Assembly (NCBI GenBank): GCA_037379345.1
Contig: CM074524.1
Location: forward strand, 22,130,750-22,194,749
Length of the DNA: 64,000 nt
From: Perna viridis
Taxonomy: Eukaryota
Direction: 5' to 3'
A model generated the notes under the pieces. The model ran no database searches, was not told the origin of the DNA, and worked only from the letters and a program-made list of their open reading frames with translations. Below are positions 10,001 to 25,373 of this stretch, one piece after another. Both the position numbers and the translations under genes were made by a program. The stretch's first letter is position 1. Each line of letters begins with the position of its first letter.

Positions 10001-13000
10001 AAAATAATTTTTCAAAGTATTATTTTAATTGTAGAATGAATTCAAGTTGTTCAAGTATTAGATACATGTATAATGTAAAGTTATTCACATCTTATATAAA
10101 AAGATTTATCACTAATCCTCTTACACTATTTTACATAACTTGTTACATTATAAAGACTGCTTATTATGTAGAAAATGTCTATTGATTTACAAATTAATGT
10201 TCATGTCAGTGATGTCCTGATGGCTACTACAAAGAAACAATTGCAACATATGTTTTTCATATGCTTTGAAAACACCTGCAGAACATATGTGTATGACGAG
10301 TTTCATAAGCTTATGACCACCATGATAAATGTGTGATGATTTTCATATGTTCAGGACCACCATGATAAACATGTGTGATGATTTTCATATGTTTAGGACC
10401 ACCATGATAAACATGTTTTTGATTAACTATTACATGTTTTCAGTAGGATCTCATTTGTATGAAAAGAGTTTGGTTTTCATATAATTTGAAAGAAATGATT
10501 TCATGAATTTTTAAATGCACAAAAACTTACATATTCCCATATTGATCATAAACATATGTTTCCATATCTTTCAATACATATGGAAAATATGTTGTAGTTT
10601 TGCATGTGTTCATTGTATATGTATTTTGTAAATATGCTGGGGCTACATTATCATATTGTTATGACATTTGTATTTTTTTGGGCACTGTATCAAGGGTTTG
10701 TCTGTCTGTCCATTCATCAACACATTTTTGCAAGCACAAATTCTTGAAAACTAAATGAAATACTGAATTAAACTTTTTACATGTGTTATTTACTGTTTGA
10801 AGATGTAATTGATATGATTTGGTTAAATTCGGGTACATATGTTTGTAAAAGTTTGATTTTTTTTCATGAAAAATCTTAGATCAGATCTTGATAACATGTG
10901 CAGATTCTCAGAAACTAATACATTATTGAGAACTGAAATTCTTTCTATTAATTATAATACAATGGTGTCCATAATAAACATTTGAATAGTAAAATTAGAT
11001 AAATATTTTTGTGCTTTTCTTTGACTTATATTTTATTGTTTTAGACTTGGAGTAGGAAGTTTTACAATTCCAGAGACGAAAACAACACCACAAGATGGTG
11101 CTTCAAAGTCACTTTTCTTCCCTGATGAAACAATATTCCAAGGTCACCCTAGATTTAGGTAATATTTTGTATTCATTTTAAGATTCTTTTTTATGTTAGA
11201 AAATGATACCATGCATTGTTTTTAAATGGGATTATAATATAGTGTTTTTAAGGTGTGAATGTTGGCTGTTACATTCCATGTATAAAGAATAACTTAATGT
11301 GAACTTACTAATTTTTTCTTACTTAAACTTTTGCGATAATCAAATGACTATAAAAAAAAATAGTACAGTCATATTGTTCCTTTTACACTATAAAAATGTT
11401 ATTATTTTTCAAAAACCGCATGAGCCATACCTGCAAATATGTTCATTTGAAAATGATCTTGAAAGTTGATATGTTTTCAGGACTTTTTTTTTATTCTCAT
11501 GTTTCTAAGCTTATTGGTGGAGTTGCTTTCATGTAAATTGGCTGATAGAGTGGTAAATGTTGATGGAGTTAAGGGGGGGGTTGGACAGGGAATTATTTTT
11601 GTAACATGTTTTCAGTGACTATAAATCACCGCCGCTAGATATTCGGTAGGCAACTTCACTATGGAGTCTCATATTGTGGGATGTGATTTCATGACTGTCA
11701 CACCTCTACATCATGTTTGCGACAACCAAGTCATTTCTGTCTTCGACCAATTTTTCTTGTGTGTATTGTAAACATTTTGAAAGGAATTGGTTGGAGTTAA
11801 TCATGTACTATGAGTTGTACACAGTTTTGAAGGCTAGGCAGTATACTCTCCTGGTTGGTTTTATTTGTATATATGTCTGATTGAGTAGTTGTCTTGTAGA
11901 AATTCTCAACTATAAAAGAAATACTGTCTTTTAATAAATTATGAGAAGTTATATATCATTATGGAAATGACTGAAGTGCGATGATGATGTATTTTACTTT
12001 TTCAGGACTTTATCAAGGAATATTAGACAGCGGAAAGGCAGCAAAGTTGAAATCCAAATTCCTGGTAGGTATATTTGGTTGAATTTCTGTTTTATAGAAT
12101 TTGTCAATCAATTCATGAAAAAGTCAGTATATTATACCCCCATTTATGGAGTAGGTGGTATATTAGTACCATCTTGTTCCTCCATTATTCTGTCTTCCAA
12201 TTTTGTATGTGGTTTTATATAGAATGGGCATATGTTATAAGTGATCTTGGTTGCTGTCAAACATCAACATCTTGTGGAGGTATACCTAGTACATGTGCAG
12301 CTTCATGTATTTATTTGATGAGTCAACCCTTTGGCATCATACAAAATCTCAGAGACTTCTTATGTATATATGTATTTATACTGGTATAAGAATCTACAAA
12401 ACAATTAAGCCAAGATTAATCCTGGCATCACTTGTTTGTAGTATATGATTAAGAGATTATTAGATACATTCTTTACTATTTAGCCCTTGTTCATATTTTA
12501 CCTTTTGGCCCAGCAGCTCTTGGACAGTTATGTAGTACGAGGCAAGTTGCTACCGATCAGCTTTAAATTTGTGTTAAAGAATTAAGGCTGTATTTGAAAA
12601 TGATATATGATTATGAATTGCTTGAACAGAATTTAATGCTAAATTAATGAATAACAACAGTAATTTCCTGTTTTATAGTTTTTAAAGATGTTAATACAAA
12701 GTCTCCATTTGTCGAGGACTACAACCAGTTAGGTGATGATGGTGAAGCAGCTCGGACAGCCAAACCTGACCATATCTACATGGACTGTATGGGGTTTGGC
12801 ATGGGATGTAGCTGTTTACAAGTCACATTCCAGGCTTGCAATATTGATGAAGCTAGACTTCTGTATGACCAGCTAGCACCCCTCTGTCCAATAATGGTAT
12901 ATAACAAATATATATTAATATTCAGAAAAAAACTTGACTTGGTATTAGAAAGGTTCATTTGTTGGAGAATTTGTCACCTGGATAATTGGTCATTTATTAT

Positions 13001-16000
13001 TTATTGAAATTTTCAGTGTTGGATTTTTTTTTAATTCATAAAACACCAAGACTATATTCCTTGTATTGAACATGGTAGAATTTCTTGGTGCTGGATTTGG
13101 CACTTAAAAATCATATAGAGCATGTAATCAAAATTTGCAATATTGTATGATAGGTATTTTAGTATTCAGTATAATCTATACAAATTATCTTCGGGATAAA
13201 TATTTATCAAAGTGGATAAAGTTTTAAATTGATTGATGGTCTTTTATGGGGAACTTAGTGTCTAGGTGGGGAACAACATGGTGTCTAGGTGGTCATATCC
13301 AAGGTTTGCAGTATTGATTAGGCTAGACTGCTAGAAAGTATATGACCGGCCAGCACCCCTATGTGACATAATGGTATGGATCCAAAAAAAAGAAAAAAAG
13401 AAACACCATAGAAATACAAAGAAAACAACATTTGAAGATGTTTTCTTGGGTTCAGCATGGTTTTTGCCTGTTTGAAACCACACTATTTACTGCATGGTGC
13501 CTGTCTTGTCTTGTAAACTTTGTAAAATACTCATTAAAATTAAAATGATAAAAAACTGCAATGTTTTCCATGCTTCAAAATTTGCATTTCTTTGAATTTT
13601 CTCTTTGTTCTAATTTATCCTGTTTTTGCTACGTTTCAGTATTCTGTTCTGTCACAATTTTAATCTTTTTGATTTCTTGCTTTTATTAAGTGAGACCTCT
13701 CATATTTTTGTGAATGAGCAACATTTAGACAAATTTACAGACATAATTTTGATCAAGTTATTTTATACTAAACGCAAAGATAGATACAAAGATTTCATAT
13801 CAAGTTAAATTTGAGTTTATATTTGTAGCTTGCTTTAAGTGCAGCATCACCTGTATATAGAGGCTACTTATCTGACAATGATGCTCGATGGACTGTCATT
13901 TCACAGTCTGTGGATGACAGAACCGATGAAGAAAGAGGGAAGAAAGTAGGTCATATCAAATGTAAATATGTCAGACTACGTCACTGTTAAACTATGTACT
14001 GTAAAGCCATTCAGTTTATTGTCTTGGTGTTCATGACAGTTTTGGTGGAAACAAACAATACAAGGAAGCATTTCCTTTGACTTGACTTATCAAGTGTGAA
14101 AACAGGTCTAGTAGCTGGTCAGTCTGTCTGTCCGTCTGTCTGTTCGTCATGCTTAGGGGTTACCTATTTTGTGTAATCTGTAACTCACAATGATACCGAT
14201 ACTTTGCACAGTATTTATGTACACATTGAAGATGTGCACCTCCTATTATTATTTATATTTTTAGCATGATAAACTTATTCCATTTTTCATCAGTTCATGT
14301 TGTGGAGGTTGCCTTCTCTGTATAATCTGTAACACAGACATTATTTACTCTATACTGCTGAAATTTTGCATAGTGTTTAAATGGACTTCCTATATATGAG
14401 AATGTAAGAGCAGAAATATGAAGGGCTAAAATATTTTCTGAAGGAAGTGACGATATTTGTCGACACAGAAGTAGACGATTGCACAAGTGCGGTGGTGCTG
14501 TTTTGTTTTTTAAATGTATTATGACATTGAGCTCTATCCATCATAGGCATAACCTAAAATTATATTATACATGTACATATTGAAGGTGTGCACCATTGTT
14601 TATTTAGCTTACTTTGTGTTTTTAAACAAATTGAAGATACTTATGTGCTGATAATTATGTGATGACACAGGTTCTTGTTACTCTTTTTGCATTGTTTGCA
14701 GTTAAAAAAGGTGAAATTTAAATTAGTTTATTGGATAAAGCGTAGTCAAATACAATTTACAGAGAATACAATATGTGCATAACCCATTACTTACAAATAG
14801 ATATTTTACATATATTGACATATAAGACCACATATTTATCATTATTAGAAAGTATATCTAAAGGTTTAAGTACGTATATTGCAGCACACCCATTATAGGG
14901 AAAAAATTTATATAGATTTAAGCTAATATGTAGTCTAGAGTATCAGCTAAGAATTAAAGAATTAGGGATTGATTGGTTTCTTACCTATATTTATTGTGAT
15001 TGTTTTTTTTTTCGATTATAGGAATTAAAGAATGACAAATACAGAATTAACAAATCTAGATATGATTCGATTGACAGTTACCTTACTGCTGGATTCAGAT
15101 GTTACAATGATATAGAACTGGTCTTGGACCAAGGAATCTGTGATGACTTAATCAAGGGAGGTAAGAATTGAACTGTAAGGGGAGGTAATTTAAGTCTTTT
15201 CTGAAACTCCCCTCCTACCCAATAGTGTTAATCTAAGGAAAATTATAAAGATTAAAGCAAAAGGACCAAGATTATAGCATTACAAAGATAATCAAGTGAG
15301 GAATAATGAATAACATACAGTTACTTAATGAGTAATATCATCAAAGATCAGGCAAAATTTGAGTAATGTTTTTAGAAAACTTTTTTTATGATTTATGTGC
15401 TGGAGTATAACAAACAATCTTTCATTTCTTATGTTATGATATGATCATTAAGATTCCAGAGATAATATAAACAGATAATATTTAAATGCTGTAATTATCT
15501 TTCCTCAGGTGTTGATGAAATGCAACAGACACAATTTCAATGCTGTAATTATCTTTCTTCAGGTGTTGATGAAATGCTAGCCAGACACATTGCTCACTTA
15601 TTTATAAGAGACCCAATCTCATTGTTCAGTGAAAAAATTAATCAAAATGATGAGGAAGACACAGATCATTTTGAAGTAAGTACTGTAGAATTTTTAGAAA
15701 CAGTATCTCCTTCTGTTTGCAGGTGATTACTCTGTTTTGCTAGCTTATACGGTTGGCTTTGAGACTGTGGGTGAAGTTTAAGACTGAAATTTTTCAGGCT
15801 GTATGATAATTAATAGGGAATCTATGCAAAAAACATACAGTGGGTGGCACATGACAAATTTTGTGTTAAATTTTGTTTACCCATTTCATATCACAAATGC
15901 ATCCTTCTTGAAGTTGAAAGTTGTTTTTTTCTTAATTAAATTCAATGATGAAAGAGAAAGAAATTACATAGAAAGCATTGAAATTCATTGAGCTTTCTCC

Positions 16001-19000
16001 TTTGGAAATTAGAGTTTTGGGTAGGGAACAGGGAACACTATTCTTTTATTATTAGCATCTTTTTATACCACTGTCTTTTAACTTGTGAATTATAATATAC
16101 TGCTGTCCTCCTATCTGTTGACATGTCCTACAGTGATTCCAACAAACTTTTTGGTGTTACTATAATTATTTTGTACACTGTTTTACCTGGTGAAAAGAAG
16201 TTTCCTTTTCTGTTCCAGTTTTTATTTCAGAGTTATGGGACTTAGTTCACTAAAATAAAAGGATGACCGGCATTGCATGTGCTTTTGAGCAGATATTTTC
16301 CTTATATCACACAAAAATGATATTGATTAATAATTCTATAATTTGCAACAATTTATTTTATCTTTGTAGAATATACAATCCACGAATTGGCAAACAATGA
16401 GATTCAAACCTCCTCCACCAAACAGTAAGATAGGATGGAGGGTAGAGTTCAGACCAATGGAAGTAAGTATATAAACAGGTCCTGTTCACCAAACAGTAAG
16501 ATAGGATGGAGGGTAGAGTTCAGACCAATGGAAGTAAGTATATAAACAGGTCCTGTTCACCAAACAGTAAGATAGGATGGAGGGTAGAGTTCAGACCAAT
16601 GGGGGTAAGTATATAAACAGGTCCTGTTCATCAAGTTCTGTCTGGGATAATTCAGGGGTACTGTCTGTCAGTCTTCTCCAAACAGTAAGATAGGATGGAG
16701 GGTAGAGTTCAGACCAATGTAGGTAAGTATATAAACAGGTCCTGTCCATCAAGTTCTGTCTGGGATAATTCAGGGGTATTGTCTGTCAGTCTCCACCAAA
16801 CAGTATGATAGGATGGAGGGTAGAGTTCAGACCAATGGAGGTAAGTATATAAACATGTCCTCTTCATCAAGTTCTGTCTGGGATAATTCAGGGGTACTGT
16901 CTGTCAGTCTTCACCAAACAGTAAGATAGGATGGAGTGTAGAGTTCAGACCAATGGAAGTAAGCATATAAACAGGTCCTGTTCGTCAAGTTCTGTCTGGG
17001 GTAATTCAAGGGTAATGTCTGTCAGTCTCCACCAAACAGTAAGATAGGATGGATGGTAGAGTTCAGACCAATGGAGGTAAGCATATAAACATGTCCTCTT
17101 CATCAAGTTCTGTCTGGGATAATTCATGCTACTGTCTGTCAGCCTGTCATCACTTAATTTCCCTCAGAACACTAGAATTTAAGAACCAACATATTGATAA
17201 TATTTTAAATGTTATGCTACATTCTTAATCTTTACCAAATTCAGCGGCTGTATTAGTTTTCATGGACAAACTTCAAGTTCAACGGGTCAAAGTTAAAAAC
17301 AGCAAGATTATTTAAAGCTGAGTATTACTTTGTATTTAAAAGCCTTACCATTAGGTGAAATCAAGTGCTCACTAATTTTTCAGTTAGTGTCATTTAGTTT
17401 ATAAAGAGTAATTATCTTCTATTATGCAATAAAGGTTGGTACAGATATCAAAGTAATGGCTGAAATTAATTTCATGGCTACACAATTTTTGCATCTCACT
17501 TGCTTTCAAATATGTATTGTGTTCTGAGAATGTATTACACTCCCATTCTGTAGGGGAGGGGGTATAAAGTTTTACCTATGTCTGTCATTCTGTACAACAT
17601 TGTTTTTGTAACAAAATTTTCAGCTTGTGTAAATCACAAGCTGTTGATTCTATATAAAAAGCTTCATATTAATATACTGAATCATGGAAGTGTTTTCATA
17701 CTCTTATGACATGTAGTTCCTGTTTGTCGATAAAGCAGGTGTTTCCATAGTGAGAAATTGCTCAGTTATCTTGTTGCCATCCTCCCAAGTCAGGGTTTTG
17801 AGTCCACCCTTGCTCCCTCAAACCCTTGACATCACTCATTCATATATAGTGGGTATCATCCAGCGCCATCTAATGAGTTGCTTAAATTTAACCCGGATCC
17901 AAAATCCAATCAAATCACTCGTAATAGAAACTCTTCTATATAACTTGCAAAGTGGCTGCACATAAAATCTTTTTTTTTTCAGTAAAGACTAAACAGAATC
18001 TACAGTTATCATTTTTGCTCATATTGCATCATTTGTGACATCATACAACTTTCAGTGCGTATTATTGTTTACCTTTCACAGACATTTGATGTTAAATCAA
18101 TTTTCATTGGTGCTTCTCACCCCAGGAAGCAACCAATTGGAATTGGCTGGACAATACCCGCTAAATATAAATGAGTGATGTCAGGGGTTTGAGGGAGCGA
18201 GAGTGCACTCAAAACCCTGACTTGGGAGGATGTCTTGTTGCCACAAATTATTTTTGCAATTTTTTTTGCAAGTAAAATTACAATGTAGTAAAAATAAGTA
18301 AGTTTACATTATGTGCATGGATATATTTTAAGGTGCAGCTGACTGACTTTGAGAATGCAGCATATACAGTGTTCATTGTTTTACTTACAAGAGTGGTGTT
18401 GTCCTATGGGCTGAATTTTGTCATTCCCATATCGAAGGTTAGTGCATTACATTGTGTTAGGTTAGTGTGATTACAGCACCTACAAAATGATGTTGAGTGC
18501 ACATAATTTGTCTGTCATTGATTAAAAGGGAATCACCTACTGAAATTCATTAGGGCTATTCCAGTAAAAGCATATGAAGGTGGGGGAGGCACTTTTATTT
18601 TTGTTTATGGGTGGGTGTTCAGGTCTCTTGACAAAATATAAAGTTAGTACAAAACATCAATAGAACTATGGGTGGCTCCCCTGGTGAAAAAATGCCTTCC
18701 CCGGATACCTCATACTAGTATCTTTTAATGGAAAGCTCTTAAGTTATTAACCAGACTGACCTGAGATGGAGATTTAAACGTTATATTATTCCAAAGGTAT
18801 TTGAATCTATGTTTAATGAACATTCAAATATTCTTATTATATAGATAGCAGTGATTTATGAAATCACTGTGTAAAAAAATTCGATAATTCACACTAATAT
18901 AAATTTGGAAATTCACTGTCTGGCCTTCTCCTGCAAAAACATCACAACACGTGTATCAACCTGCCAATCAAAAAATTTAAAATTTATGATGAAATAGCAA

Positions 19001-22000
19001 TGAATAATGGAGAAAATCTAAGCAATAGCGTTGGTAGTTACAGGGATATAATAGAATAATCAATTGGTTATCCCAAAAAAAACTAAAATATAATCACTCA
19101 TGCCAAGAACACATTAAGGTTAATTCTTGAACATATTTTGGCTATTCACACTTTCAAATTAATTATCAAATTATTCTCCATTTCCCAGTAATGTAACGTA
19201 GTGGCTACAAAACTGTTGATGATATAATCATTCTATGTAGGTTTTGATGCACATTTTCCAGAAACCAGATGACCATTCTTAATTAGCCTTTGTTGTGGAC
19301 CTTCCATGGATTAATGGACAATAAGTGCATAGATGCATAAATAATTCACTATCTATCTTTCCCACCTCTTTCTATTTATTAGTAGTTAATCAAAGACATT
19401 TGAAATCTAAATGATCTGCCTTACAGTTAATAAGTTAATTTATGTATAAATGATGGATTTAATAAAACATTGAACACTTATTAACTGTTGAAACTATGGG
19501 TTATGCAACAGTAACTACCAAAGGCAGTTCATTAAAACTAAAGAAAGACCAACTCTCTTCCCTTAACATCACTGTATGTGCTATATATCAAATTTCATAG
19601 GTCAACTTGGTTGTTAACCTTTACAGCTAAAAATATCACAATTTTATAAAAGAATCAGGATTATATAGATTATTATACAATGATATATGTCTATACCAAG
19701 CTCTGGTTTATTTGGAAACCTGTCTAAACCAGACACTTGAAATAGTCCCTTTATGTCAATTAAATGTATTTTAAAACTTGATAAACAGAACATCTGTATA
19801 ATATTCTGTTATTGGTAATTTATAGGTAACATTTTATTTTCACTTTTTTGTATGTTAGAAAAATACAAGTCACAATTTTGACCATGAAAAAGATGACCTA
19901 TTTTATCGGGATGAGCCAACATCATTCAACTTCACTGTGATGGTTTTTCAAGCATGCCTGGTTTGAAACTGACCTGTTCTTTTTTTGTTTTTTTTTTTCA
20001 TCAAGGCCAGTACACTCTTATTACATTATCAATCTGTGTACACCATAGGAAAATGTCAAAAATTACTTATAAAACCAAGTCAGAAAAACTTTAACCAAAG
20101 AAACACTGAATTTTAGATAAGATATTTTGTTCGACAAATGAATGTCATTGAAAATTTAATTTCTGCACTCTGTCTTAATTGTAGGTGGATGAAAATATGA
20201 CGACTGCTCATAAAAGGGATGCCGTAAATACAGAACAATTCTATTTCAGGAAAGAAATCTTCACAGGTTTGTATTAAGGTCATAGGTCATAGGTCAACTA
20301 TCTAGTACAAATGAGTAAAACAAGTTCTTAATTCTATATTGAAAAAAAAATATTAATTAAACAACAAATTTCTTTGTTCAAATCTTCTTGTTATATAATA
20401 GGCCACAAATTTAGATTTTGGGAAGTGAGCAAAATAAGTCCCAGCATTGAGTAACAAAGCAGCAGAGATAAGACATATGATGTAAGCCTTGCCATCTTAT
20501 TGTACTTTTTAAAGTAATAATTACGTTTACTATGCATGTCATAAAAAAATACACTAATCTCATTGGATAATCAGCTTAACATGCGTGTGTCATCAGTCGA
20601 TATTTTCAAGCTATTTGTATAGGTCATGCCTGCAATTAAGTGGACTACTTTTATGATATCTTTGTATTGCCTATTTTCTATGTAAATCTAAACTAAAATA
20701 AAAGGAACATATGAAATGTAAACATTAGAATTGAATGTTTCATTTTGAATGTTTCATTGGCATGTAAAAGTGTTGACTGGTCACACATTTGGACATGAAG
20801 CGCTTGTGTACTTCATTTCAAATATGCTATGGCCGACACTTTTACTCCCTGATGTAACATAAAAAATTGAAACATTCAAATCTTAATATTATCTGATATT
20901 GGTTAACAATGAAAAATGAAGGGATGTTTCCCTTTATAAGCAGACATTTTCTAAAAATGAGAATAAAATTTCTCAAAGTTGCTTTAAGTTAATGTACAAT
21001 GTGTGGACAATGGAAATATGTTATTTTACCAAAATACATATACATCTGGCAAAAGCAAGGATGATTTTACAAGGAGCAAGAAGTATTCGGAAAATGGCAA
21101 AATGAGAAATTAATGTATTGTAAAATTATGAATATTCAGGAAAAATTCAGATTTGAAAAAGTGGATGAAAATCATCCCTGCAGAAAACAGTCCCATTGAA
21201 ATTGATACCAGTATGTATGAAACAAAGGAGCACTTTCATAGGAAATTGATTGTGTTTCATGTCAGACTTAGTTCGTTCATTACTTTTCAGAATGTTCTCC
21301 CTCAAGTATTGTACAGTGTATGGCATCTGGGAAATGTCAAAGACGGTGCTCATCAATGGAGGATGAATATCGTCTTATGTCCATGAATGAAATATTCAAT
21401 GGCAGTGTAAGTAGAATATTTACTGAGAGGTGATAGATGGTGTAGAAAAACCAACCAAACAAACAAGGCTTTTTTGGTCTACCGTGGTTGGGAAAGATTT
21501 TTTTCAAATGGGCCATTTTCAGCATTTATTACAACTACTCAAGATGTTTATGGGCCATATATCAACATTCCAGGTAAAATCCTGTACCTTAAATGGGCCA
21601 TTTAGCTTCAATGAGCATATGACCCATGGCCCCTGTCTTTCCCTATCACAGGGTCTATATATATACTATATTTTTACATAATGGTAACCCTTTCTTTATT
21701 TAGATCTGTATTTTTGAGAAATCATACATTTGTCTCCCATTTAAGTCAATGTTAACTTTTGCAAAGTACCAATATCATGTACAATCTGTATGATATGCAT
21801 AGCAACCAAATGAAAAACTAAGATGTGATCAGTAACTGCTTCTGAACAAGAATTACAAGTGAAGTCGGTGGGTTTTTGAAATAAATGAATCACCTCCTGT
21901 CTGATTTTTATAATGGCTGCTACTTAAATGTTTATTCTTCTGTAATAACCAATTTGTAGTTGGGAGAACCATTGAAGAGGACTGCATGCATACATAACCT

Positions 22001-25000
22001 CTCACATTAAACAGGTCAACACCATTAGTTTTGTTACAGATATCTCCCTTTTTTTAAACTTTAAAAACCTGTAGTGGATGATTTGCTATTAGAGAATTAC
22101 TTTTTATTAACATTACCTATGAACTGAACTTTAATAGTTAATAATTGTGGTAAAATAGTTTTTGCATGGACAAACATTATGAAAACAAAAGTCCTCAATA
22201 ATTGGTCAATGAGAAAGGTTAAAGGTCATTAGAACTTAGGTAAATCAACTTCAAAGGTGAAGTTGTGACCTTGTCCTAAATTAATGGTCCAAGACCTCAA
22301 ACTCTCACTATTTTGAACCGGTGCATTGCTTAAGAATAATTTATAATTTATGAGCAACTCGGGTGTTTCTAGAAAAGCAGAAAACGCTTACCCTACCAGT
22401 GCACCTGGTCCATGCTCCAAGTTTTTAGTGGAGTCCGAATTACTCATTTGCTTTTGTTACTTTGTATGTATGATTTTACATGTTTTAGTTACTTTATGTT
22501 ATTTGTTGTGTACGTCTGTTTTCCATGTCTGGTCTTTGTCCCTGGATTACATTCTATTGATTACCGCTATAACCTTGGTTTGCTTGATTACTCTTGCAAT
22601 TACCAAATATGGCAACATTCCTGCCCTGTTGAAAATCCTTATTTAAATGTCAAAATGTACCAAACAAATTATATATTTAAGAAATGACTGATATATTTTT
22701 TCAGTCTATGAGGAAATAACCTCAATCTCTTGGTACACACTGAATAACCTACGTAGCTGATTATTTTCAAGTATGCATCATAAGCATTCACGTTCTTTCA
22801 AATAGATCGAAATAATATAACAGCCATTCTTTATGATTTAATTTTAATATCAAACTTTAATGAGTAAATTAGCAAAAAAGGCTTATGATGTCACAGCCAC
22901 AGTTATAGGTCATATACATCAGCAGGACCCTGATACGTATGAATATTCATTGTCAGTTGTTTAATCTGGTCAATATCATATGCAACTTAAAGATTGCTAC
23001 AACGTACCTCTTTTAAAAAAATATCATACACATGTCTATGTTTGTTTTTTTGCTTGTATGAGAATGGGAACTATACATTAAAAGATGAAATGATCCTTTA
23101 GAGCATAGAGCATTTGTACCATTTCTGATTTTGAAAGTAAACTAAAATCAGTGACAGAGAATATTTGACAATTAGTGACTTTGAAGACTTAAGTTTGACT
23201 TTCTAATTGTAAAAGTGTTTAGTATTGTTTTGCATCACAGCATATTTAAACATGTGTGTATGACATAGCTCAACATAGATTTCCTCAAGAATTGCTGTGA
23301 ATATAGCTTACAAAGGGTTGGAATTTTAAAAGAATCTTTAAGGAAATGATATAGATGAATTTAGGGTTTTCATAAGTATTACATGGCTTTGACCATTCAT
23401 TCTTTTGGGTGGTATAGGTTACCCATTGTGTAACTGCAACTCTGTCTACACCTTTATATGGATATCTATTTAAACTTTCATGGAATTGTTATTGAGCACC
23501 TGCTTTTTAGCTCACCTGGCCAATAGGCCATGTGAGCTATTGCCATCACTATGTATCCATCGTCCCTCATTGTCGTCCATAAACTTTTTCAACATCTTCT
23601 CTTCTGAAAATACTCAATAGATTGTAACCAAACTTTGCATGAATGTTCATTAGGGCATTTTTAACAAACCTTTTGTGGGGATTTTTGATCTGGCAAAAAA
23701 CATGGCCGTGGTTACTAAAAATAGACCAAAGGGGTCAAATTGTAGAATTATGCAAATAACTCAAAAATAGTTGGGTTTAGATAAAATCTGATGGGGTAAA
23801 ATTTTTCATCATGATGGGATGGACCTGTACCAAAATTTTCAGAAAGATCCATTGACGAATGAATGAGTTATGAGTTCTGAAATGGATGTTTTTTTTTTTT
23901 AAATCTCTTTTAGAATATTGTAGGATGGATCCTACAAAATGAATGTTTGTTAGGATATTCTTATTCTTCAGAATTTTTATCCGTTGAAACCATGGCCACC
24001 ACTAATAAATATTGACAACTTGTTGAAATAACTTGAAAACCAACTTGATTAAATGATTCTTGTGACAATAGTACAGTACAGTCAAGGAGTCCAGCTTTAG
24101 AAAGCTATAAAGAATATTTTTGATCAGGTGAGCGATTCAGGCTCTATAGAGCGTCTAGTTTGATTTTTAATATTGGTTTTCCACAAGTGTATCATGGACT
24201 ATATTTTTTTTTATTTCAGGATGAATTTCTGGGTCTGATTCCTATGATTAAGCAGTATTTAAATAGTGTGGATGTTGATGTAGATACTAGCTGTACAATA
24301 CAAAATTACCTCAAACTTATATCTAATAGGGCTTCAGGTATGTAAAGAGTTACCTCCCTTACAATCCAAATTTTGCCCAATACTTAGACAAAGGAAAACT
24401 AAAATTACGTTACTGTTACTGCAAAGTGAAGCTGGATGAATTGAAAAAAGGAAATTGTAATAAAAAGATGAAACCAAATTTATATTTTAAGAATTTTGTG
24501 ACAGGAGATAATTGTAAGGATAGAGGGAATGAATGAGATTACAAAATATAAATAGGGTTTGTAAGGTCATCTTCCTCACCAGAGATTCCATTGTACTCAT
24601 AGAACATACTTTAATCCATAGACTGATCTATATTTTATAGTTCACTTTCAGGATCTGAAAACATAGCTTTTTAACACTAACACTAATCTATTTATCGCTT
24701 TTCTTGACACTTTTATCATGTAAAAATTGATATTTTTCATTTTTATTGATATTTTCACACAGAAAGATGTTTTGCTTTAAATAATGAAATCAATGCTCAG
24801 TAAATTACAAATTTCTATGCATTTGAATGATAGATTGGGACCCATTCTTGTGAGACCACAGAGTCACTGCAGTCGTTGCCTTATAAATTTGTCAACAAGC
24901 CAAGGCTAAAAACAGTAATAAACATATATAGTAATAATAGGCATGTTAACTCATGGCTGTCGGGCTGGTGGTAAGTTTGAAGACAAGTCAAGTGATTACA

Positions 25001-25373
25001 CTAACATTCTCCATTACAGTGATTTCTCCATGTAAGTTTTCTGAAATTTGGAAATAAATAAGTTTTAAGACAATTCGTTTATCAAAACTGTTTTTTATCT
25101 TATTTTGCAGGGACAGAACCAACCATTGCAAAGTGTATACGAGACTTTGTTACTGAACATCCAGATTACAAACAGGATTCTGTAGTGTCAGAGATTATAA
25201 ACTATGATTTACTTAAACTAATTGAAGAAAAAACGGAAAAAGGTGAAACTCTTTCATCGGGAAATTTTTCGTCAAAGACTAACGACGATATTCCAAAGGC
25301 TTTATCAAAAACCGAAAAATTTTTAAATGGAAAGAAACCTCAGAGAAATTCTGTCACCGAACTGCATACGTAG
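915..25373 (+). CDS. GCLC: Glutamate-cysteine ligase catalytic subunit, 15 coding exons in window (5'-partial; 610 aa in window)
   Basis: Exons 915-1024, 7077-7196, 9409-9474, 11045-11158, 12006-12064, 12679-12896, 13829-13945, 15022-15160, 15563-15675, 16370-16462, 18333-18437, 20185-20266, 21291-21406, 24220-24337, 25111-25373. All are GT-AG and phase-consistent, totalling 1833 nt to TAG. Hallmark motifs: VEYM, WRPEY, HPRF, HIYMDxMGFGMG, [57 protein letters not shown]. Confidence 0.97.
1172..2971. mobile_element. Non-autonomous composite-like DNA transposon with long terminal direct repeats (KolobokP-like)
   Basis: 467-bp direct repeats at 1172-1638 and 2505-2971 (3 mismatches seen). Each repeat has imperfect inverted ends GGCTAAAAACCACTAATTC / GAATTGGTGGTCTGTAACC. 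Outer flanks are TATA...TATA; inner flanks are TAAA and TTAA. The 866-bp spacer has no credible ORF. Confidence 0.8.
3737..4587 (+). mobile_element. Helentron-associated/pearl-like element carrying ~4.3 internal tandem repeats of ~160 bp
   Basis: CTGT-type microsatellite near the 5' end; units start near 3818, 3976, 4138, 4298 and 4445 (GGCTGTAACTTTT...TGACCTTGAAC); 3' palindrome GAGATGGATTCCATCTC followed by CTAGTT. Confidence 0.7.
7077..7196 (+). CDS. GCLC: GCLC exon 2 ([25 protein letters not shown]...)
   Basis: ttacag|G...TTAAG|gtgagg. Confidence 0.96.
7911..8115. mobile_element. TA-flanked MITE (Tc1/mariner-type)
   Basis: TA-TTGTGAAAGTA...TACTTTCACAG-TA terminal inverted repeats. Confidence 0.7.
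9409..9474 (+). CDS. GCLC: GCLC exon 3 ([22 protein letters not shown])
   Basis: tttatag|A...CCCAG|gtatgt. Confidence 0.92.
10303..10415. repeat. ~41-bp tandem repeat x3 (GACCACCATGATAAACATGTGTGATGATTTTCATATGTT)
   Basis: Visible tandem units. Confidence 0.7.
11045..11158 (+). CDS. GCLC: GCLC exon 4 (LGVGSFTIP...[11 protein letters not shown]...HPRF)
   Basis: ttttag|A...TTTAG|gtaata. Confidence 0.95.
12006..12064 (+). CDS. GCLC: GCLC exon 5 ([19 protein letters not shown])
   Basis: tttcag|G...CCTG|gtaggt. Confidence 0.94.
12679..12896 (+). CDS. GCLC: GCLC exon 6 (FKDVNT...[23 protein letters not shown]...[12 protein letters not shown])
   Basis: tttatag|TT...ATAATG|gtatat. Confidence 0.96.
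13829..13945 (+). CDS. GCLC: GCLC exon 7 ([16 protein letters not shown]...SVDDRT)
   Basis: tttgtag|CTT...AAGAAA|gtaggt. Confidence 0.96.
15022..15160 (+). CDS. GCLC: GCLC exon 8 ([21 protein letters not shown]...)
   Basis: ttatag|GAA...GGGAG|gtaaga. Confidence 0.95.
15470..15577 (+). repeat. 54-bp tandem duplication spanning the exon 9 splice acceptor
   Basis: AATGCTGTAATTATCTTTC(C/T)TCAGGTGTTGATGAAATGC occurs twice, 54 nt apart. Confidence 0.92.
15563..15675 (+). CDS. GCLC: GCLC exon 9 ([17 protein letters not shown]...DHFE); alternative in-frame acceptor would start it at 15509
   Basis: tcttcag|GT...TTTGAA|gtaagt. Confidence 0.93.
16370..16462 (+). CDS. GCLC: GCLC exon 10 ([31 protein letters not shown])
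   Basis: tttgtag|AAT...ATGGAA|gtaagt. Confidence 0.96.
16416..17145 (+). repeat. 7-copy tandem array of the GCLC exon 10 3' half plus splice donor
   Basis: Copies start at 16416, 16487, 16558, 16676, 16794, 16912 and 17030 (periods 71, 71, 118, 118, 118, 118). Confidence 0.95.
17778..18232. mobile_element. Mutator/MULE-type MITE
   Basis: ~63-bp TIRs (CATCCTCCCAAGTCAGGGTTTTGAGT...) and a perfect 9-bp TSD TCTTGTTGC at 17769-17777 and 18233-18241. Confidence 0.88.
18333..18437 (+). CDS. GCLC: GCLC exon 11 ([25 protein letters not shown]...IPISK)
   Basis: ttttaag|GTG...TCGAAG|gttagt. Confidence 0.95.
18551..18741. mobile_element. Short degenerate MITE
   Basis: Imperfect inverted ends TAGGGCTATTCCA...TGGAAAGCTCTTA. 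Confidence 0.5.
20185..20266 (+). CDS. GCLC: GCLC exon 12 ([14 protein letters not shown]...FYFRK)
   Basis: ttgtag|GTG...ACAG|gtttgt. Confidence 0.94.
21291..21406 (+). CDS. GCLC: GCLC exon 13 (CSPSSIVQC...[14 protein letters not shown])
   Basis: ttttcag|AA...GGCAGT|gtaagt; the EYxLMSxxxIxNG motif is conserved in GCLC. Confidence 0.9.
22351..22595 (+). mobile_element. Penelope-like element 3' tail/pLTR copy
   Basis: Matches the tail of the RT-bearing copy at 52525-52763. Confidence 0.85.
23505..24160 (+). mobile_element. Helentron-associated non-autonomous element (HINE/DINE-1-like)
   Basis: 5' TTTTAGCTCACCTGGC, degenerate CGT microsatellite, subterminal inverted CAGGTGAGC, 3' hairpin followed by CTAGTTT. 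Confidence 0.8.
24220..24337 (+). CDS. GCLC: GCLC exon 14 ([23 protein letters not shown]...RASG)
   Basis: tttcag|GAT...TTCAG|gtatgt. Confidence 0.95.
25111..25373 (+). CDS. GCLC: GCLC terminal coding exon ([25 protein letters not shown]...TELHT*)
   Basis: tttgcag|GG...ACG TAG. Confidence 0.93.

What the first reader, a model, noticed from the sequence alone, without database searches (positions are those of the whole stretch)
16416..17145. Tandem array of the active-site exon end that parses as in-frame cassette exons, one with a stop
Seen: seven copies of exon 10's 3' half plus GTAAG. The 118-bp unit is a 67-nt intron (gtaag...tgtctgtcag) plus a 51-nt phase-0/0 exon. Copy 4 reads [16 protein letters not shown] (TAG); copy 5 [17 protein letters not shown]; copy 6 [17 protein letters not shown]; copy 7 [17 protein letters not shown]. 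Known: GWRVEFRP carries the metal- and substrate-binding Glu/Arg residues of eukaryotic GCL. Inference: inclusion would duplicate a catalytic strand or trigger NMD, so the array could act as a copy-number-variable splicing rheostat on glutathione synthesis, or as a snapshot of exon/intron birth. The acceptors have weak pyrimidine tracts, so they may be silent.
Basis: partly seen in the sequence, partly recalled or inferred. Interest (0 to 1): 0.8.

Follow-up and report, generated by a model that had tools for sequence, protein, structure and literature searches.

The report
Intronic minisatellite repeating an exon end
A bivalve's glutathione-synthesis gene (GCLC) has a minisatellite that repeats the end of one exon and its splice donor seven times inside the next intron, and RNA data show the cell splices at the first donor and skips the rest, as in known human genes such as F7 and CBS.

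Summary
From 16416 to 17142 there are three 71-bp copies, then four to five 118-bp copies, of the last ~51 nt of GCLC exon 10 plus its GTAAG donor. Copies 4-7 parse as 51-nt in-frame pseudo-exons separated by 67-nt mini-introns, and copy 4 ends in TAG. The unit occurs nowhere else in the 723-Mb genome.

The functional reading is not supported by the RNA I could see.
- One 2.7-kb transcript contig (run X8) joins exon 10 (16370-16462) directly to exon 11 (18333-), with no array RNA at all.
- In two other runs, array-bearing RNA is colinear with the genome across copies 5-7. It is unspliced, not cassette-spliced.
- Substitutions in the pseudo-exons look neutral.

This is a known kind of structure: a minisatellite whose first monomer spans an exon-intron boundary and so reiterates the donor. 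Human examples are F7 IVS7, CBS IVS13, IFI6, LMNB2 and PDGFA, where the most upstream donor is normally used.

One point stays open. Intron 10 is the only intron in the laid stretch with locus-specific RNA contigs, at up to about one third of exon depth, and this varies among runs. That fits slowed removal or retention of the intron caused by decoy splice sites, but it is unproven. Copy-number variation was not tested.

The parts
16370..16462 (+). It encodes [31 protein letters not shown].
   Evidence: Laid as one piece of the X8 transcript contig, record 22. Aligns to yeast Gcl 3IG5 residues 439-475. Matches Pfam PF03074 positions 167-202.
16463..16468 (+). Authentic 5' splice site, GAA|GTAAGT. 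This is the one used in the mature mRNA.
   Evidence: X8 record 22 joins 16462 to 18333. It matches the CAG|GTAAGT consensus at 7 of 9 positions.
16416..16634 (+). Young 71-bp sub-array of 3.1 copies at 97% identity. Each unit is the exon end plus the donor plus 25 nt of intron. It adds pseudo-donors at 16534 and 16605. The junction shows 2-nt microhomology (CA).
16556..17142 (+). Older 118-bp sub-array of 5.0 copies, 91-95% identical in pairs. Variants are shared between copies in a mosaic pattern, which suggests unequal exchange or conversion. The unit junction reads cag|TCT, against CCT in both the ancestral exon and the ancestral intron flank (3-nt microhomology).
16672..16722 (+). Pseudo-exon of copy 4 (51 nt), ending in TAG. 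Its pseudo-donor TAG|GTAAGT matches the consensus at 8 of 9 positions, better than the authentic donor.
16790..16840 (+). Pseudo-exon of copy 5 (K>M). Its pseudo-donor is GAG|GTAAGT (8 of 9).
16908..16958 (+). Pseudo-exon of copy 6 (GWR>GWS). Its pseudo-donor is GAA|GTAAGC (6 of 9).
   Evidence: The X1 contig 16861-17126 reads straight through it, unspliced.
17026..17076 (+). Pseudo-exon of copy 7 (GWR>GWM). Its pseudo-donor is GAG|GTAAGC (7 of 9).
   Evidence: The X1 contigs 16861-17126 and 17097-17910 read through it, unspliced.
17143..18332 (+). Remainder of intron 10. 17143-17510 is unique to this locus. About 17512-17765 is a diverged dispersed repeat. 17778-18232 is a MITE-like element with 106-nt inverted ends. 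The authentic acceptor is ttttaag|G at 18332|18333.
   Evidence: RNA contigs lie at 17097-17910 (X1), 17099-17805 (X4), and 17297-17481 and 17690-17805 (X8).
18333..18437 (+). Exon 11 ([11 protein letters not shown]...), joined directly to exon 10 in the mRNA.
   Evidence: The piece was laid to 18435, and the last AG is ambiguous with the start of exon 12.

Best explanation
This is a locus-specific intronic minisatellite whose first monomer spans the exon 10 / intron 10 boundary of an expressed GCLC gene. A 118-bp segment (the last ~51 nt of the exon plus the first ~67 nt of the intron) was duplicated in tandem at a 3-nt microhomology. It was amplified to about five copies, which have since diverged by 5-9%. 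Later a 71-bp sub-segment at the exon end was duplicated twice. Every copy carries a donor-like site, and two of these match the consensus better than the authentic donor. The splicing machinery nevertheless uses the most upstream donor (16462|16463) and the acceptor at 18332|18333. The whole array is therefore removed as part of intron 10, and the protein is unchanged. The pseudo-exons evolve neutrally and are not coding cassettes. First-donor use is shown. Its cause is inferred by analogy with the human F7 IVS7 minisatellite: exon definition or 5'-to-3' selection of the first functional donor. A likely side effect, also inferred, is that the reiterated splice sites slow or block removal of intron 10 in some samples.
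For: Array anatomy. The unit is found only at this locus in the 723-Mb genome. X8 record 22 (2672 nt, depth 38.9) is colinear with 15022-15158, 15561-15675, 16370-16462, 18333-18435 and 20183-20266. X8 depth over 16540-17121 is 0, and its depth in bin 16346-16539 (18.7) is exactly what the 93-nt exon alone gives. The X1 and X4 exon-11 contigs each carry 28 further letters upstream of 18333, which fits the same junction. X1 record 3 (16861-17126, no mismatch) and record 4 (17097-17910) are colinear with the genome through the pseudo-acceptors at 16907 and 17025 and the pseudo-donors at 16959 and 17077. Of nine substitutions in the pseudo-exons, seven are nonsynonymous or nonsense, and the 67-nt intron parts show similar divergence. 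Pseudo-acceptor pyrimidine content from -25 to -4 is 0.45-0.50, against 0.55-0.73 for RNA-verified acceptors. The kind is already described: minisatellites with the first monomer across an exon-intron boundary in F7, IFI6, CBS, LMNB2 and PDGFA. In F7, only the most upstream donor is used, even when downstream pseudo-sites are improved to 91% U1 complementarity (PMC1557585).
Against: All RNA evidence comes from assembled contigs. These drop rare variants and give no strand. NMD-degraded isoforms would be under-represented. The junction of pseudo-donor 2 (16534) to exon 11 has the same 31-mers as the canonical junction, so its use would show only as unspliced donor-1 words. In X1 those words (record 2, 16435-16516) have depth 30, against roughly 20 expected from two genomic occurrences at the intron depth of 8.5-11. 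Some use of proximal pseudo-donors, or extra 71-bp copies in that animal, is therefore possible. X1 has no contigs on 16517-16860 although both flanks are covered, and I cannot explain this. The joints table was truncated, so rare joints into the array could not be inspected.
Confidence: 0.8

Rival explanations
1. Decoy-exon effect. The pseudo-exons and pseudo-donors engage U1/U2AF and the intron-terminal splice sites non-productively. Intron 10 is then retained or detained in a sample-dependent share of transcripts, which lowers productive GCLC mRNA. Array length would set the strength of the effect. This can coexist with the best explanation for the mature mRNA.
For: Intron 10 is the only intron in 14600-20400 with locus-specific RNA contigs. 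Depths are 8.5-10.9 against exon depth 27 in X1, 3-12 against 18-30 in X4, and 3-5 against 39 in X8. The unique bins of four other introns (14794-14987, 15182-15375, 16152-16345, 19256-19643) have depth 0 or 0.09 in all three runs. 17143-17510 is single-copy in the genome. The shares of sampled words fall into two classes: about 0.13, which fits exons only, and 0.26-0.38, which fits exons plus the unique part of intron 10. Both classes occur within study P2. Cryptic cassettes in retained introns longer than 1 kb, acting through their splice sites, are the published decoy model (PMC6097662, PMC7373989).
Against: This is one intron, so the link between array and retention is a coincidence of one. 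The strand of the intronic RNA is unknown, so it could be an independent or antisense transcript, or driven by the neighbouring repeats. X8 shows intronic contigs downstream but none on the array. No junctions to the pseudo-exons were seen, and no copy-number data exist. The pseudo-exons are not known to be conserved, unlike the SF3B1 decoys.
Confidence: 0.2
2. Unproductive splicing at the proximal pseudo-donors. As in human IFI6 and CBS, the second and third donors (16534, 16605) are used in part of the transcripts. This adds 71 or 142 nt with a TAA four codons past the exon end, and the products are removed by NMD.
For: Donors 1 and 2 are identical over more than 46 nt of upstream context, and donor 3 has a consensus G at -1. 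The depth excess of the unspliced donor-1 contig in X1 fits this. There is precedent in IFI6 and CBS (PMC1557585 introduction). Reading exon 10 through into the intron gives EVSI*.
Against: X8 has a single unbranched contig through exon 10 and no array words, so there is no detectable use in that sample. The X1 excess can equally be explained by an extra 71-bp copy in that animal or by uneven depth. In F7, identical pseudo-sites stay silent.
Confidence: 0.2
3. One reading: copies 5-7 are real in-frame cassette exons (and copy 4 a poison exon), whose regulated inclusion alters or switches off the enzyme.
For: The formal parse holds: AG acceptors, strong GTAAG donors, 51-nt phase-0/0 units and 67-nt mini-introns.
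Against: The RNA contig through copies 5-7 is unspliced. The canonical junction is the only one seen. There is no coding constraint: changes include a stop, R>S, R>M and K>M. Acceptors are weaker than every verified acceptor in the stretch. A 17-residue duplicate of an active-site strand would probably wreck the fold (inference).
Confidence: 0.03
4. Assembly artefact: a collapsed or expanded repeat produced by the assembler.
For: Tandem arrays are error-prone in assemblies, and the three 71-bp copies are nearly identical.
Against: The copies differ at specific positions. Those variant-specific sequences are found in independent DNA contigs (X15, 16867-17072, no mismatch) and in RNA contigs from runs of two other studies. 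The exact number of 71-bp copies is the only part not independently confirmed.
Confidence: 0.02

Closest known systems
Human F7 intron 7 37-bp VNTR minisatellite (Borensztajn et al. 2006, PMC1557585)
   Same: The first monomer spans the exon-intron boundary, so the authentic donor is followed by several identical or better pseudo-donors. Only the most upstream donor is used in normal mRNA. The origin is tandem duplication.
   Different: The F7 monomer holds only 4 exon bases. Here it holds ~51 coding bases and, by accident, an AG, so units also parse as in-frame pseudo-exons. Two nested periods (71 and 118 bp) are present here. Polymorphism is documented for F7 and untested here. The host here is a bivalve, not a mammal.
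Human CBS intron 13 31-bp VNTR and IFI6 (6-16) intron 2 minisatellite
   Same: Both are boundary-spanning minisatellites with reiterated donors. [quoted passage not shown] The CBS VNTR was reported to be associated with reduced enzyme activity (Lievers 2001, title as cited in PMC5188458). That is the nearest precedent for a 'rheostat'.
   Different: Use of proximal pseudo-donors is not shown here (absent in X8, ambiguous in X1 and X4). No genotype-phenotype data exist for this locus.
Human LMNB2 100-bp and PDGFA 81-bp boundary minisatellites
   Same: These have long monomers (81-100 bp), many copies, and only the authentic donor used (PMC1557585 introduction).
   Different: I have no information on whether those monomers contain pseudo-acceptors or in-frame pseudo-exons.
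Decoy exons in retained introns (SF3B1 intron 4; Parra et al. 2018, PMC6097662)
   Same: Cryptic, poorly spliced cassettes with real splice-site motifs lie inside an intron longer than 1 kb that shows retention-like RNA.
   Different: Published decoys are conserved, bind U2AF, and were shown by minigenes to promote retention. Here retention is only suggested by contigs of unknown strand, and the pseudo-exons are young duplicates.
Intron gain by tandem duplication of an AGGT-containing exon segment (Hellsten et al. 2011, PMC3265369; potato RdRp, PMC4974935)
   Same: A tandem duplication that involves exon sequence supplies ready-made splice signals, and the transcript is restored by splicing out the duplicate.
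   Different: No new intron is created here. The duplicate simply lengthens a pre-existing intron whose position is shared with the paralog.

Membership tests
Exon-intron-boundary minisatellite with reiterated 5' pseudo-splice sites (F7 IVS7 type) | A tandem array whose first monomer spans an exon-intron boundary | tested here: met
   The array starts at 16412-16416, inside RNA-verified exon 10 (16370-16462), and runs to 17142.
Exon-intron-boundary minisatellite with reiterated 5' pseudo-splice sites (F7 IVS7 type) | [quoted passage not shown] | tested here: met
   Six further GTAAG[TC] sites with the same upstream context. They match the consensus at 6-8 of 9 positions, against 7 of 9 for the authentic site.
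Exon-intron-boundary minisatellite with reiterated 5' pseudo-splice sites (F7 IVS7 type) | Only, or mainly, the most upstream donor is used in mature mRNA | tested here: met
   An unbranched X8 contig joins 16462 to 18333, with zero array depth. In X1 and X4, minor use of donors 2 or 3 cannot be excluded.
Exon-intron-boundary minisatellite with reiterated 5' pseudo-splice sites (F7 IVS7 type) | Copy number is polymorphic (VNTR) | not testable with these tools
   Short-read contigs cannot count copies. Only SNPs in copies 6-7 were seen in X4.
Decoy exons that promote intron retention | Cryptic cassette(s) with splice-site motifs inside a large (>1 kb) intron | tested here: met
   Four pseudo-exons lie in an 1870-nt intron.
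Decoy exons that promote intron retention | The host intron is retained in a share of polyadenylated transcripts | tested here: inconclusive
   Locus-specific RNA contigs lie over intron 10 only, at up to about 0.3-0.4 of exon depth, and this varies among runs. The strand and the continuity with the exons are unknown.
Decoy exons that promote intron retention | Removing or blocking the decoy splice sites reduces retention; U2AF binds at the decoy | not testable with these tools
   This needs a minigene, antisense oligonucleotides or CLIP.
Functional alternative cassette exons arising from tandem exon duplication | Inclusion in mRNA | tested here: not met
   No contig shows inclusion. The contig through copies 5-7 is unspliced. 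Rare isoforms are not excluded.
Functional alternative cassette exons arising from tandem exon duplication | Purifying selection on the duplicated coding sequence | tested here: not met
   Seven of nine changes are nonsynonymous or nonsense, including a stop, and divergence is similar to the intron part. The sample is small.
Intron gain by tandem duplication | A new intron at a position that lacks one in relatives | tested here: not met
   The chromosome-10 paralog has an intron at the same codon boundary (...HPMD | VQVTDFEN...). The mRNA here is unchanged.

The most novel reading that the evidence does not exclude
The array is a natural, possibly copy-number-variable bank of decoy splice sites that detains intron 10 of the rate-limiting glutathione-synthesis gene. 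Array length and cell state would together set how much productive GCLC mRNA a mussel makes. That would be a VNTR splicing rheostat acting through intron retention, not through exon inclusion.
Probability: 0.1. Interest if true: 0.6.

Novelty: new member of a known kind. Interest (0 to 1): 0.3.

Why it matters
As it stands, this is a clear invertebrate example of a structure described so far in a handful of human genes. It shows the same outcome: the first of seven equal or better donors is chosen. That is a small piece of evidence that the 'most upstream donor wins' behaviour is not peculiar to mammals. It also warns gene annotators. Ab initio models could easily thread the in-frame pseudo-exons into a false GCLC isoform with a duplicated active-site strand. 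If the intron-10-specific RNA signal proves to be array-driven retention, the locus would be a compact natural model for decoy-site-mediated control of a stress-response enzyme in an ecotoxicology sentinel animal.

Tried and rejected
- Looking for the array in other assemblies or species: a word search with the 53-aa minus-strand ORF that runs through the array found nothing. This says nothing about absence elsewhere.
- Rfam scan of 15600-18500: only a sub-threshold SNORD78-like match (23.7 bits against a cut-off of 38, E 0.48) inside the MITE, taken as chance.
- ORFs in the intron: none longer than 71 aa, and none convincing.
- Dispersed satellite or transposon origin of the unit: rejected, because the unit matches only this locus.
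- Intron birth: rejected.
- Assembly artefact: rejected.
- The primary yeast Gcl structure paper was not held, so a secondary source that tabulates its contacts was used.
- A literature search for bivalve GCLC paralogs or isoforms gave nothing relevant.
- Not done: the exons were not joined into a spliced protein, so annotated isoforms that contain the pseudo-exons were not searched for. The large representative-protein search was not used, because the protein's identity was not in question.
Full report
**What is there.** The window is G000:C14:22130750-22194749 of a 723-Mb, 46-contig genome with 32% G+C in the window. Earlier agents of this scan called it a mussel-like bivalve. I did not check that.

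Pfam GCS (PF03074) matches a chain of plus-strand exons from 12774 to 25226. One of them is 16367-16471, at profile positions 167-202. That exon, 16370-16462, reads [31 protein letters not shown]. It aligns end to end with yeast glutamate-cysteine ligase 3IG5 residues 439-475.

In the yeast structure, Glu470 coordinates a Mg2+ ion and Arg472 contacts the substrate glutamate (Table 3 of PMC5613772). These are the E and the second R of GWRVEFRP.

**The array.**
- Tandem Repeats Finder reports 16416-16634 (period 71, 3.1 copies, 97%) and 16556-17142 (period 118, 5.0 copies, 92%, score 1006). This is the strongest array in the window.
- Seven copies of the exon end plus GTAAG[TC]ATATAAACA are present, with donor-like sites at 16463, 16534, 16605, 16723, 16841, 16959 and 17077.
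Copy 4 ends in TAG, and copies 5, 6 and 7 carry K>M, R>S and R>M.
- Copies 2 and 3 belong to the younger 71-bp sub-array and lack the 47-nt tail that holds the pseudo-acceptor.
- The unit matches nothing else in the genome, so it is neither a dispersed satellite nor a transposon.

**Origin, read from the sequence.**
- The 118-bp unit junction is cag|TCT-CCACC. The ancestral exon reads CCT-CCACC and the ancestral intron flank reads cag|CCT-GTC. The first duplication therefore used a 3-nt microhomology, and the junction mutated once (C>T) before amplification.
- The 71-bp junction (gtt|CA|ccaaac) shows a 2-nt microhomology.
- The 118-bp copies differ by 5-9%. Variants are shared in a mosaic: copies 5 and 7 share aacaTgtcctCttc, while copies 6 and 7 share GTAAGC. 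This suggests unequal exchange or conversion.
- The 71-bp copies are nearly identical and so are recent.
- Within the pseudo-exons, leaving out the junction bases, I count nine changes. Seven are nonsynonymous or nonsense, and two are the same synonymous GAA>GAG. The 67-nt intron parts are about as diverged. This is what neutral decay looks like, not coding constraint, although the numbers are small.

**Splice signals.**
- The authentic donor GAA|GTAAGT matches CAG|GTAAGT at 7 of 9 positions. Pseudo-donors 4 and 5 match at 8 of 9, 3 and 7 at 7 of 9, 2 is identical to the authentic donor, and 6 matches at 6 of 9. The authentic site is therefore not the strongest.
- The pseudo-acceptors have 45-50% pyrimidines from -25 to -4. 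The five RNA-verified acceptors nearby have 55-73%. The pseudo-acceptors are weaker but not hopeless.
- Reading from exon 10 into the intron gives EVSI and then a stop. Any use of a downstream donor without further splicing would therefore give a premature stop.

**RNA evidence.** One search for runs and one laying of reads were allowed. All four runs laid were Logan contigs, so they show what is present. They do not show absence, strand or abundance.
- In X8, a single 2672-nt contig (record 22, depth 38.9) is colinear with 15022-15158, 15561-15675, 16370-16462, 18333-18435 and 20183-20266. X8 depth over 16540-17121 is zero. The depth in bin 16346-16539 (18.7) equals what the 93-nt exon alone gives. 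The mature mRNA therefore uses the first donor and skips the whole array.
- In X1 and X4 the exon contigs break at 16445 and 16435. That is where the graph must branch if array words are present. The exon-11 contigs carry 28 further letters upstream of 18333, which fits the same junction.
- X1 also has an 82-nt contig (16435-16516, depth 30) that reads through the first donor, a 266-nt contig (16861-17126, depth 10.9, no mismatch), and an 814-nt contig (17097-17910, depth 8.5).
- The second of these runs straight through pseudo-acceptors 16907 and 17025 and pseudo-donors 16959 and 17077. The array-bearing RNA is therefore unspliced there, not cassette-spliced.
- X15, a DNA run that may be the assembly's own sample, matches 16867-17072 exactly.
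- X4 carries SNPs at 17015 and 17058. Copies 5-7 (X1) and 6-7 (X4) thus appear in runs of two other studies, so they probably exist in other animals.

**An observation beyond the finding.** Intron 10 is the only intron of the laid stretch with locus-specific RNA.
- The unique bins of four other introns (14794-14987, 15182-15375, 16152-16345, 19256-19643) have depth 0, or 0.09 in one case, in all three RNA runs.
- Intron 10 has depth 8.5-12 in X1 (exons 27), 3-12 in X4 (exons 18-30) and 3-5 in X8 (exons 39).
- 17143-17510 is single-copy in the genome, so this RNA comes from this locus.
- The shares of sampled words fall into two classes. About 0.13 is what three exons give. 0.26-0.38 is what exons plus the unique part of intron 10 give. 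Both classes occur within one study (P2).
- My inference is that intron 10 is retained, or removed slowly, in some samples.
- This fits the published decoy-exon model, in which cryptic cassettes in introns longer than 1 kb engage the terminal splice sites and block excision (PMC6097662, PMC7373989). It remains one intron, with no strand information. An independent transcript is not excluded.

**Caveats.**
- The junction of pseudo-donor 2 to exon 11 has the same 31-mers as the canonical junction. Its use would show only as unspliced donor-1 words.
- In X1 those words have depth 30, against about 20 expected from two genomic occurrences at the intron depth. Some use of proximal pseudo-donors, or an extra 71-bp copy in that animal, is possible.
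- X1 has no contigs on 16517-16860 although both flanks are covered. I cannot explain this.
- The joints table was truncated to the best-supported rows, which were dominated by repeats. Even the canonical joint was not listed, so rare joints into the array could not be inspected.

**Comparison with what is known.** The kind is already described. Borensztajn et al. [quoted passage not shown]
- F7 IVS7: 37 bp, 5-9 repeats, only the most upstream site used, even when downstream sites are improved to 91% U1 complementarity.
- LMNB2 (100 bp) and PDGFA (81 bp): only the authentic site is used.
- The CBS VNTR was reported to be associated with reduced enzyme activity (Lievers 2001, title as cited in PMC5188458).
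- What is particular here: the monomer takes in 51 coding bases of an active-site strand and, by accident, an AG, so it mimics in-frame cassette exons. There are also two nested periods, and the host is a bivalve.
- Intron gain by tandem duplication (PMC3265369, PMC4974935) does not apply. The chromosome-10 paralog has an intron at the same codon boundary, and the mRNA here is unchanged.

**Verdict.**
- The formal parse is right, but cassette-exon use and exon/intron birth are not supported.
- The best reading is a silent boundary-spanning minisatellite, a new member of a known kind (confidence 0.8).
- Two open side questions remain: whether the array causes the retention-like RNA over intron 10, and whether its copy number varies.

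**Process notes.**
Annotated isoforms containing the pseudo-exons were therefore not searched for.
- The large representative-protein search was left unused, because the protein's identity was never in question.

Noticed in passing
window 15470-15577: A second boundary-spanning tandem duplication in the same gene: 54 bp x 2 at 91% identity, covering the acceptor and first bases of exon 9. The transcript contigs start exon 9 at the downstream copy (laid from 15561; by the AG rule 15563), so the upstream copy stays in the intron. Within 12-26 kb, the only two tandem-duplication loci found both straddle an exon boundary. My rough post hoc estimate of the chance of that is about 0.01.
   Followed up: partly
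G000:C10:23360586-23382726 (loci L001, L002): Two further GCS-domain gene copies lie on contig 10 in opposite orientation. In L001 the homologous strand reads GWCVEFHPMD, so both arginines of GWRVEFRP, including the one matching the glutamate-binding Arg472 of yeast, are replaced. The intron position after ...PMD is shared with the chromosome-14 gene. This may be a diverged or non-catalytic paralog.
   Followed up: partly
window 17778-18232: A MITE-like element with 106-nt inverted ends (85% complementary) and 243 nt between them, inside intron 10. Summed DNA contig depth there is about 1000 times the single-copy level, and RNA depth is also high.
   Followed up: partly
window 17512-17765: A diverged dispersed repeat (71-80% identity, at least 40 copies on many contigs) just upstream of the MITE.
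   Followed up: no
window 15991 > 19085: A joint that skips 3093 bases, seen in all three RNA runs (depth 87-191, far above the GCLC exons) but not in the DNA run. Both ends lie in high-copy repeats in introns 9 and 11. It most likely reflects an expressed full-length repeat elsewhere whose two parts match these fragments, not splicing at this locus.
   Followed up: no
window 18374: C>T in exon 11 in all three RNA runs, while the DNA run X15 reads C. This is probably a common allele difference between the assembled animal and the others. Editing cannot be told apart without matched DNA.
   Followed up: no
window 16517-16860: Run X1 has no contigs on this stretch (copies 3-5) although it covers 16435-16516 and 16861-17910. 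This could be a different array allele in that animal or an effect of repeat filtering. It is unexplained.
   Followed up: no
window 16461-16462 and homologous positions in copies 3, 4, 5 and 7: The base at donor position -1 is A in the authentic exon and in copies 2 and 6, but G (the consensus) in copies 3, 4, 5 and 7. The older copies may preserve an ancestral GAG codon, with the authentic exon later changed to the synonymous GAA.
   Followed up: no
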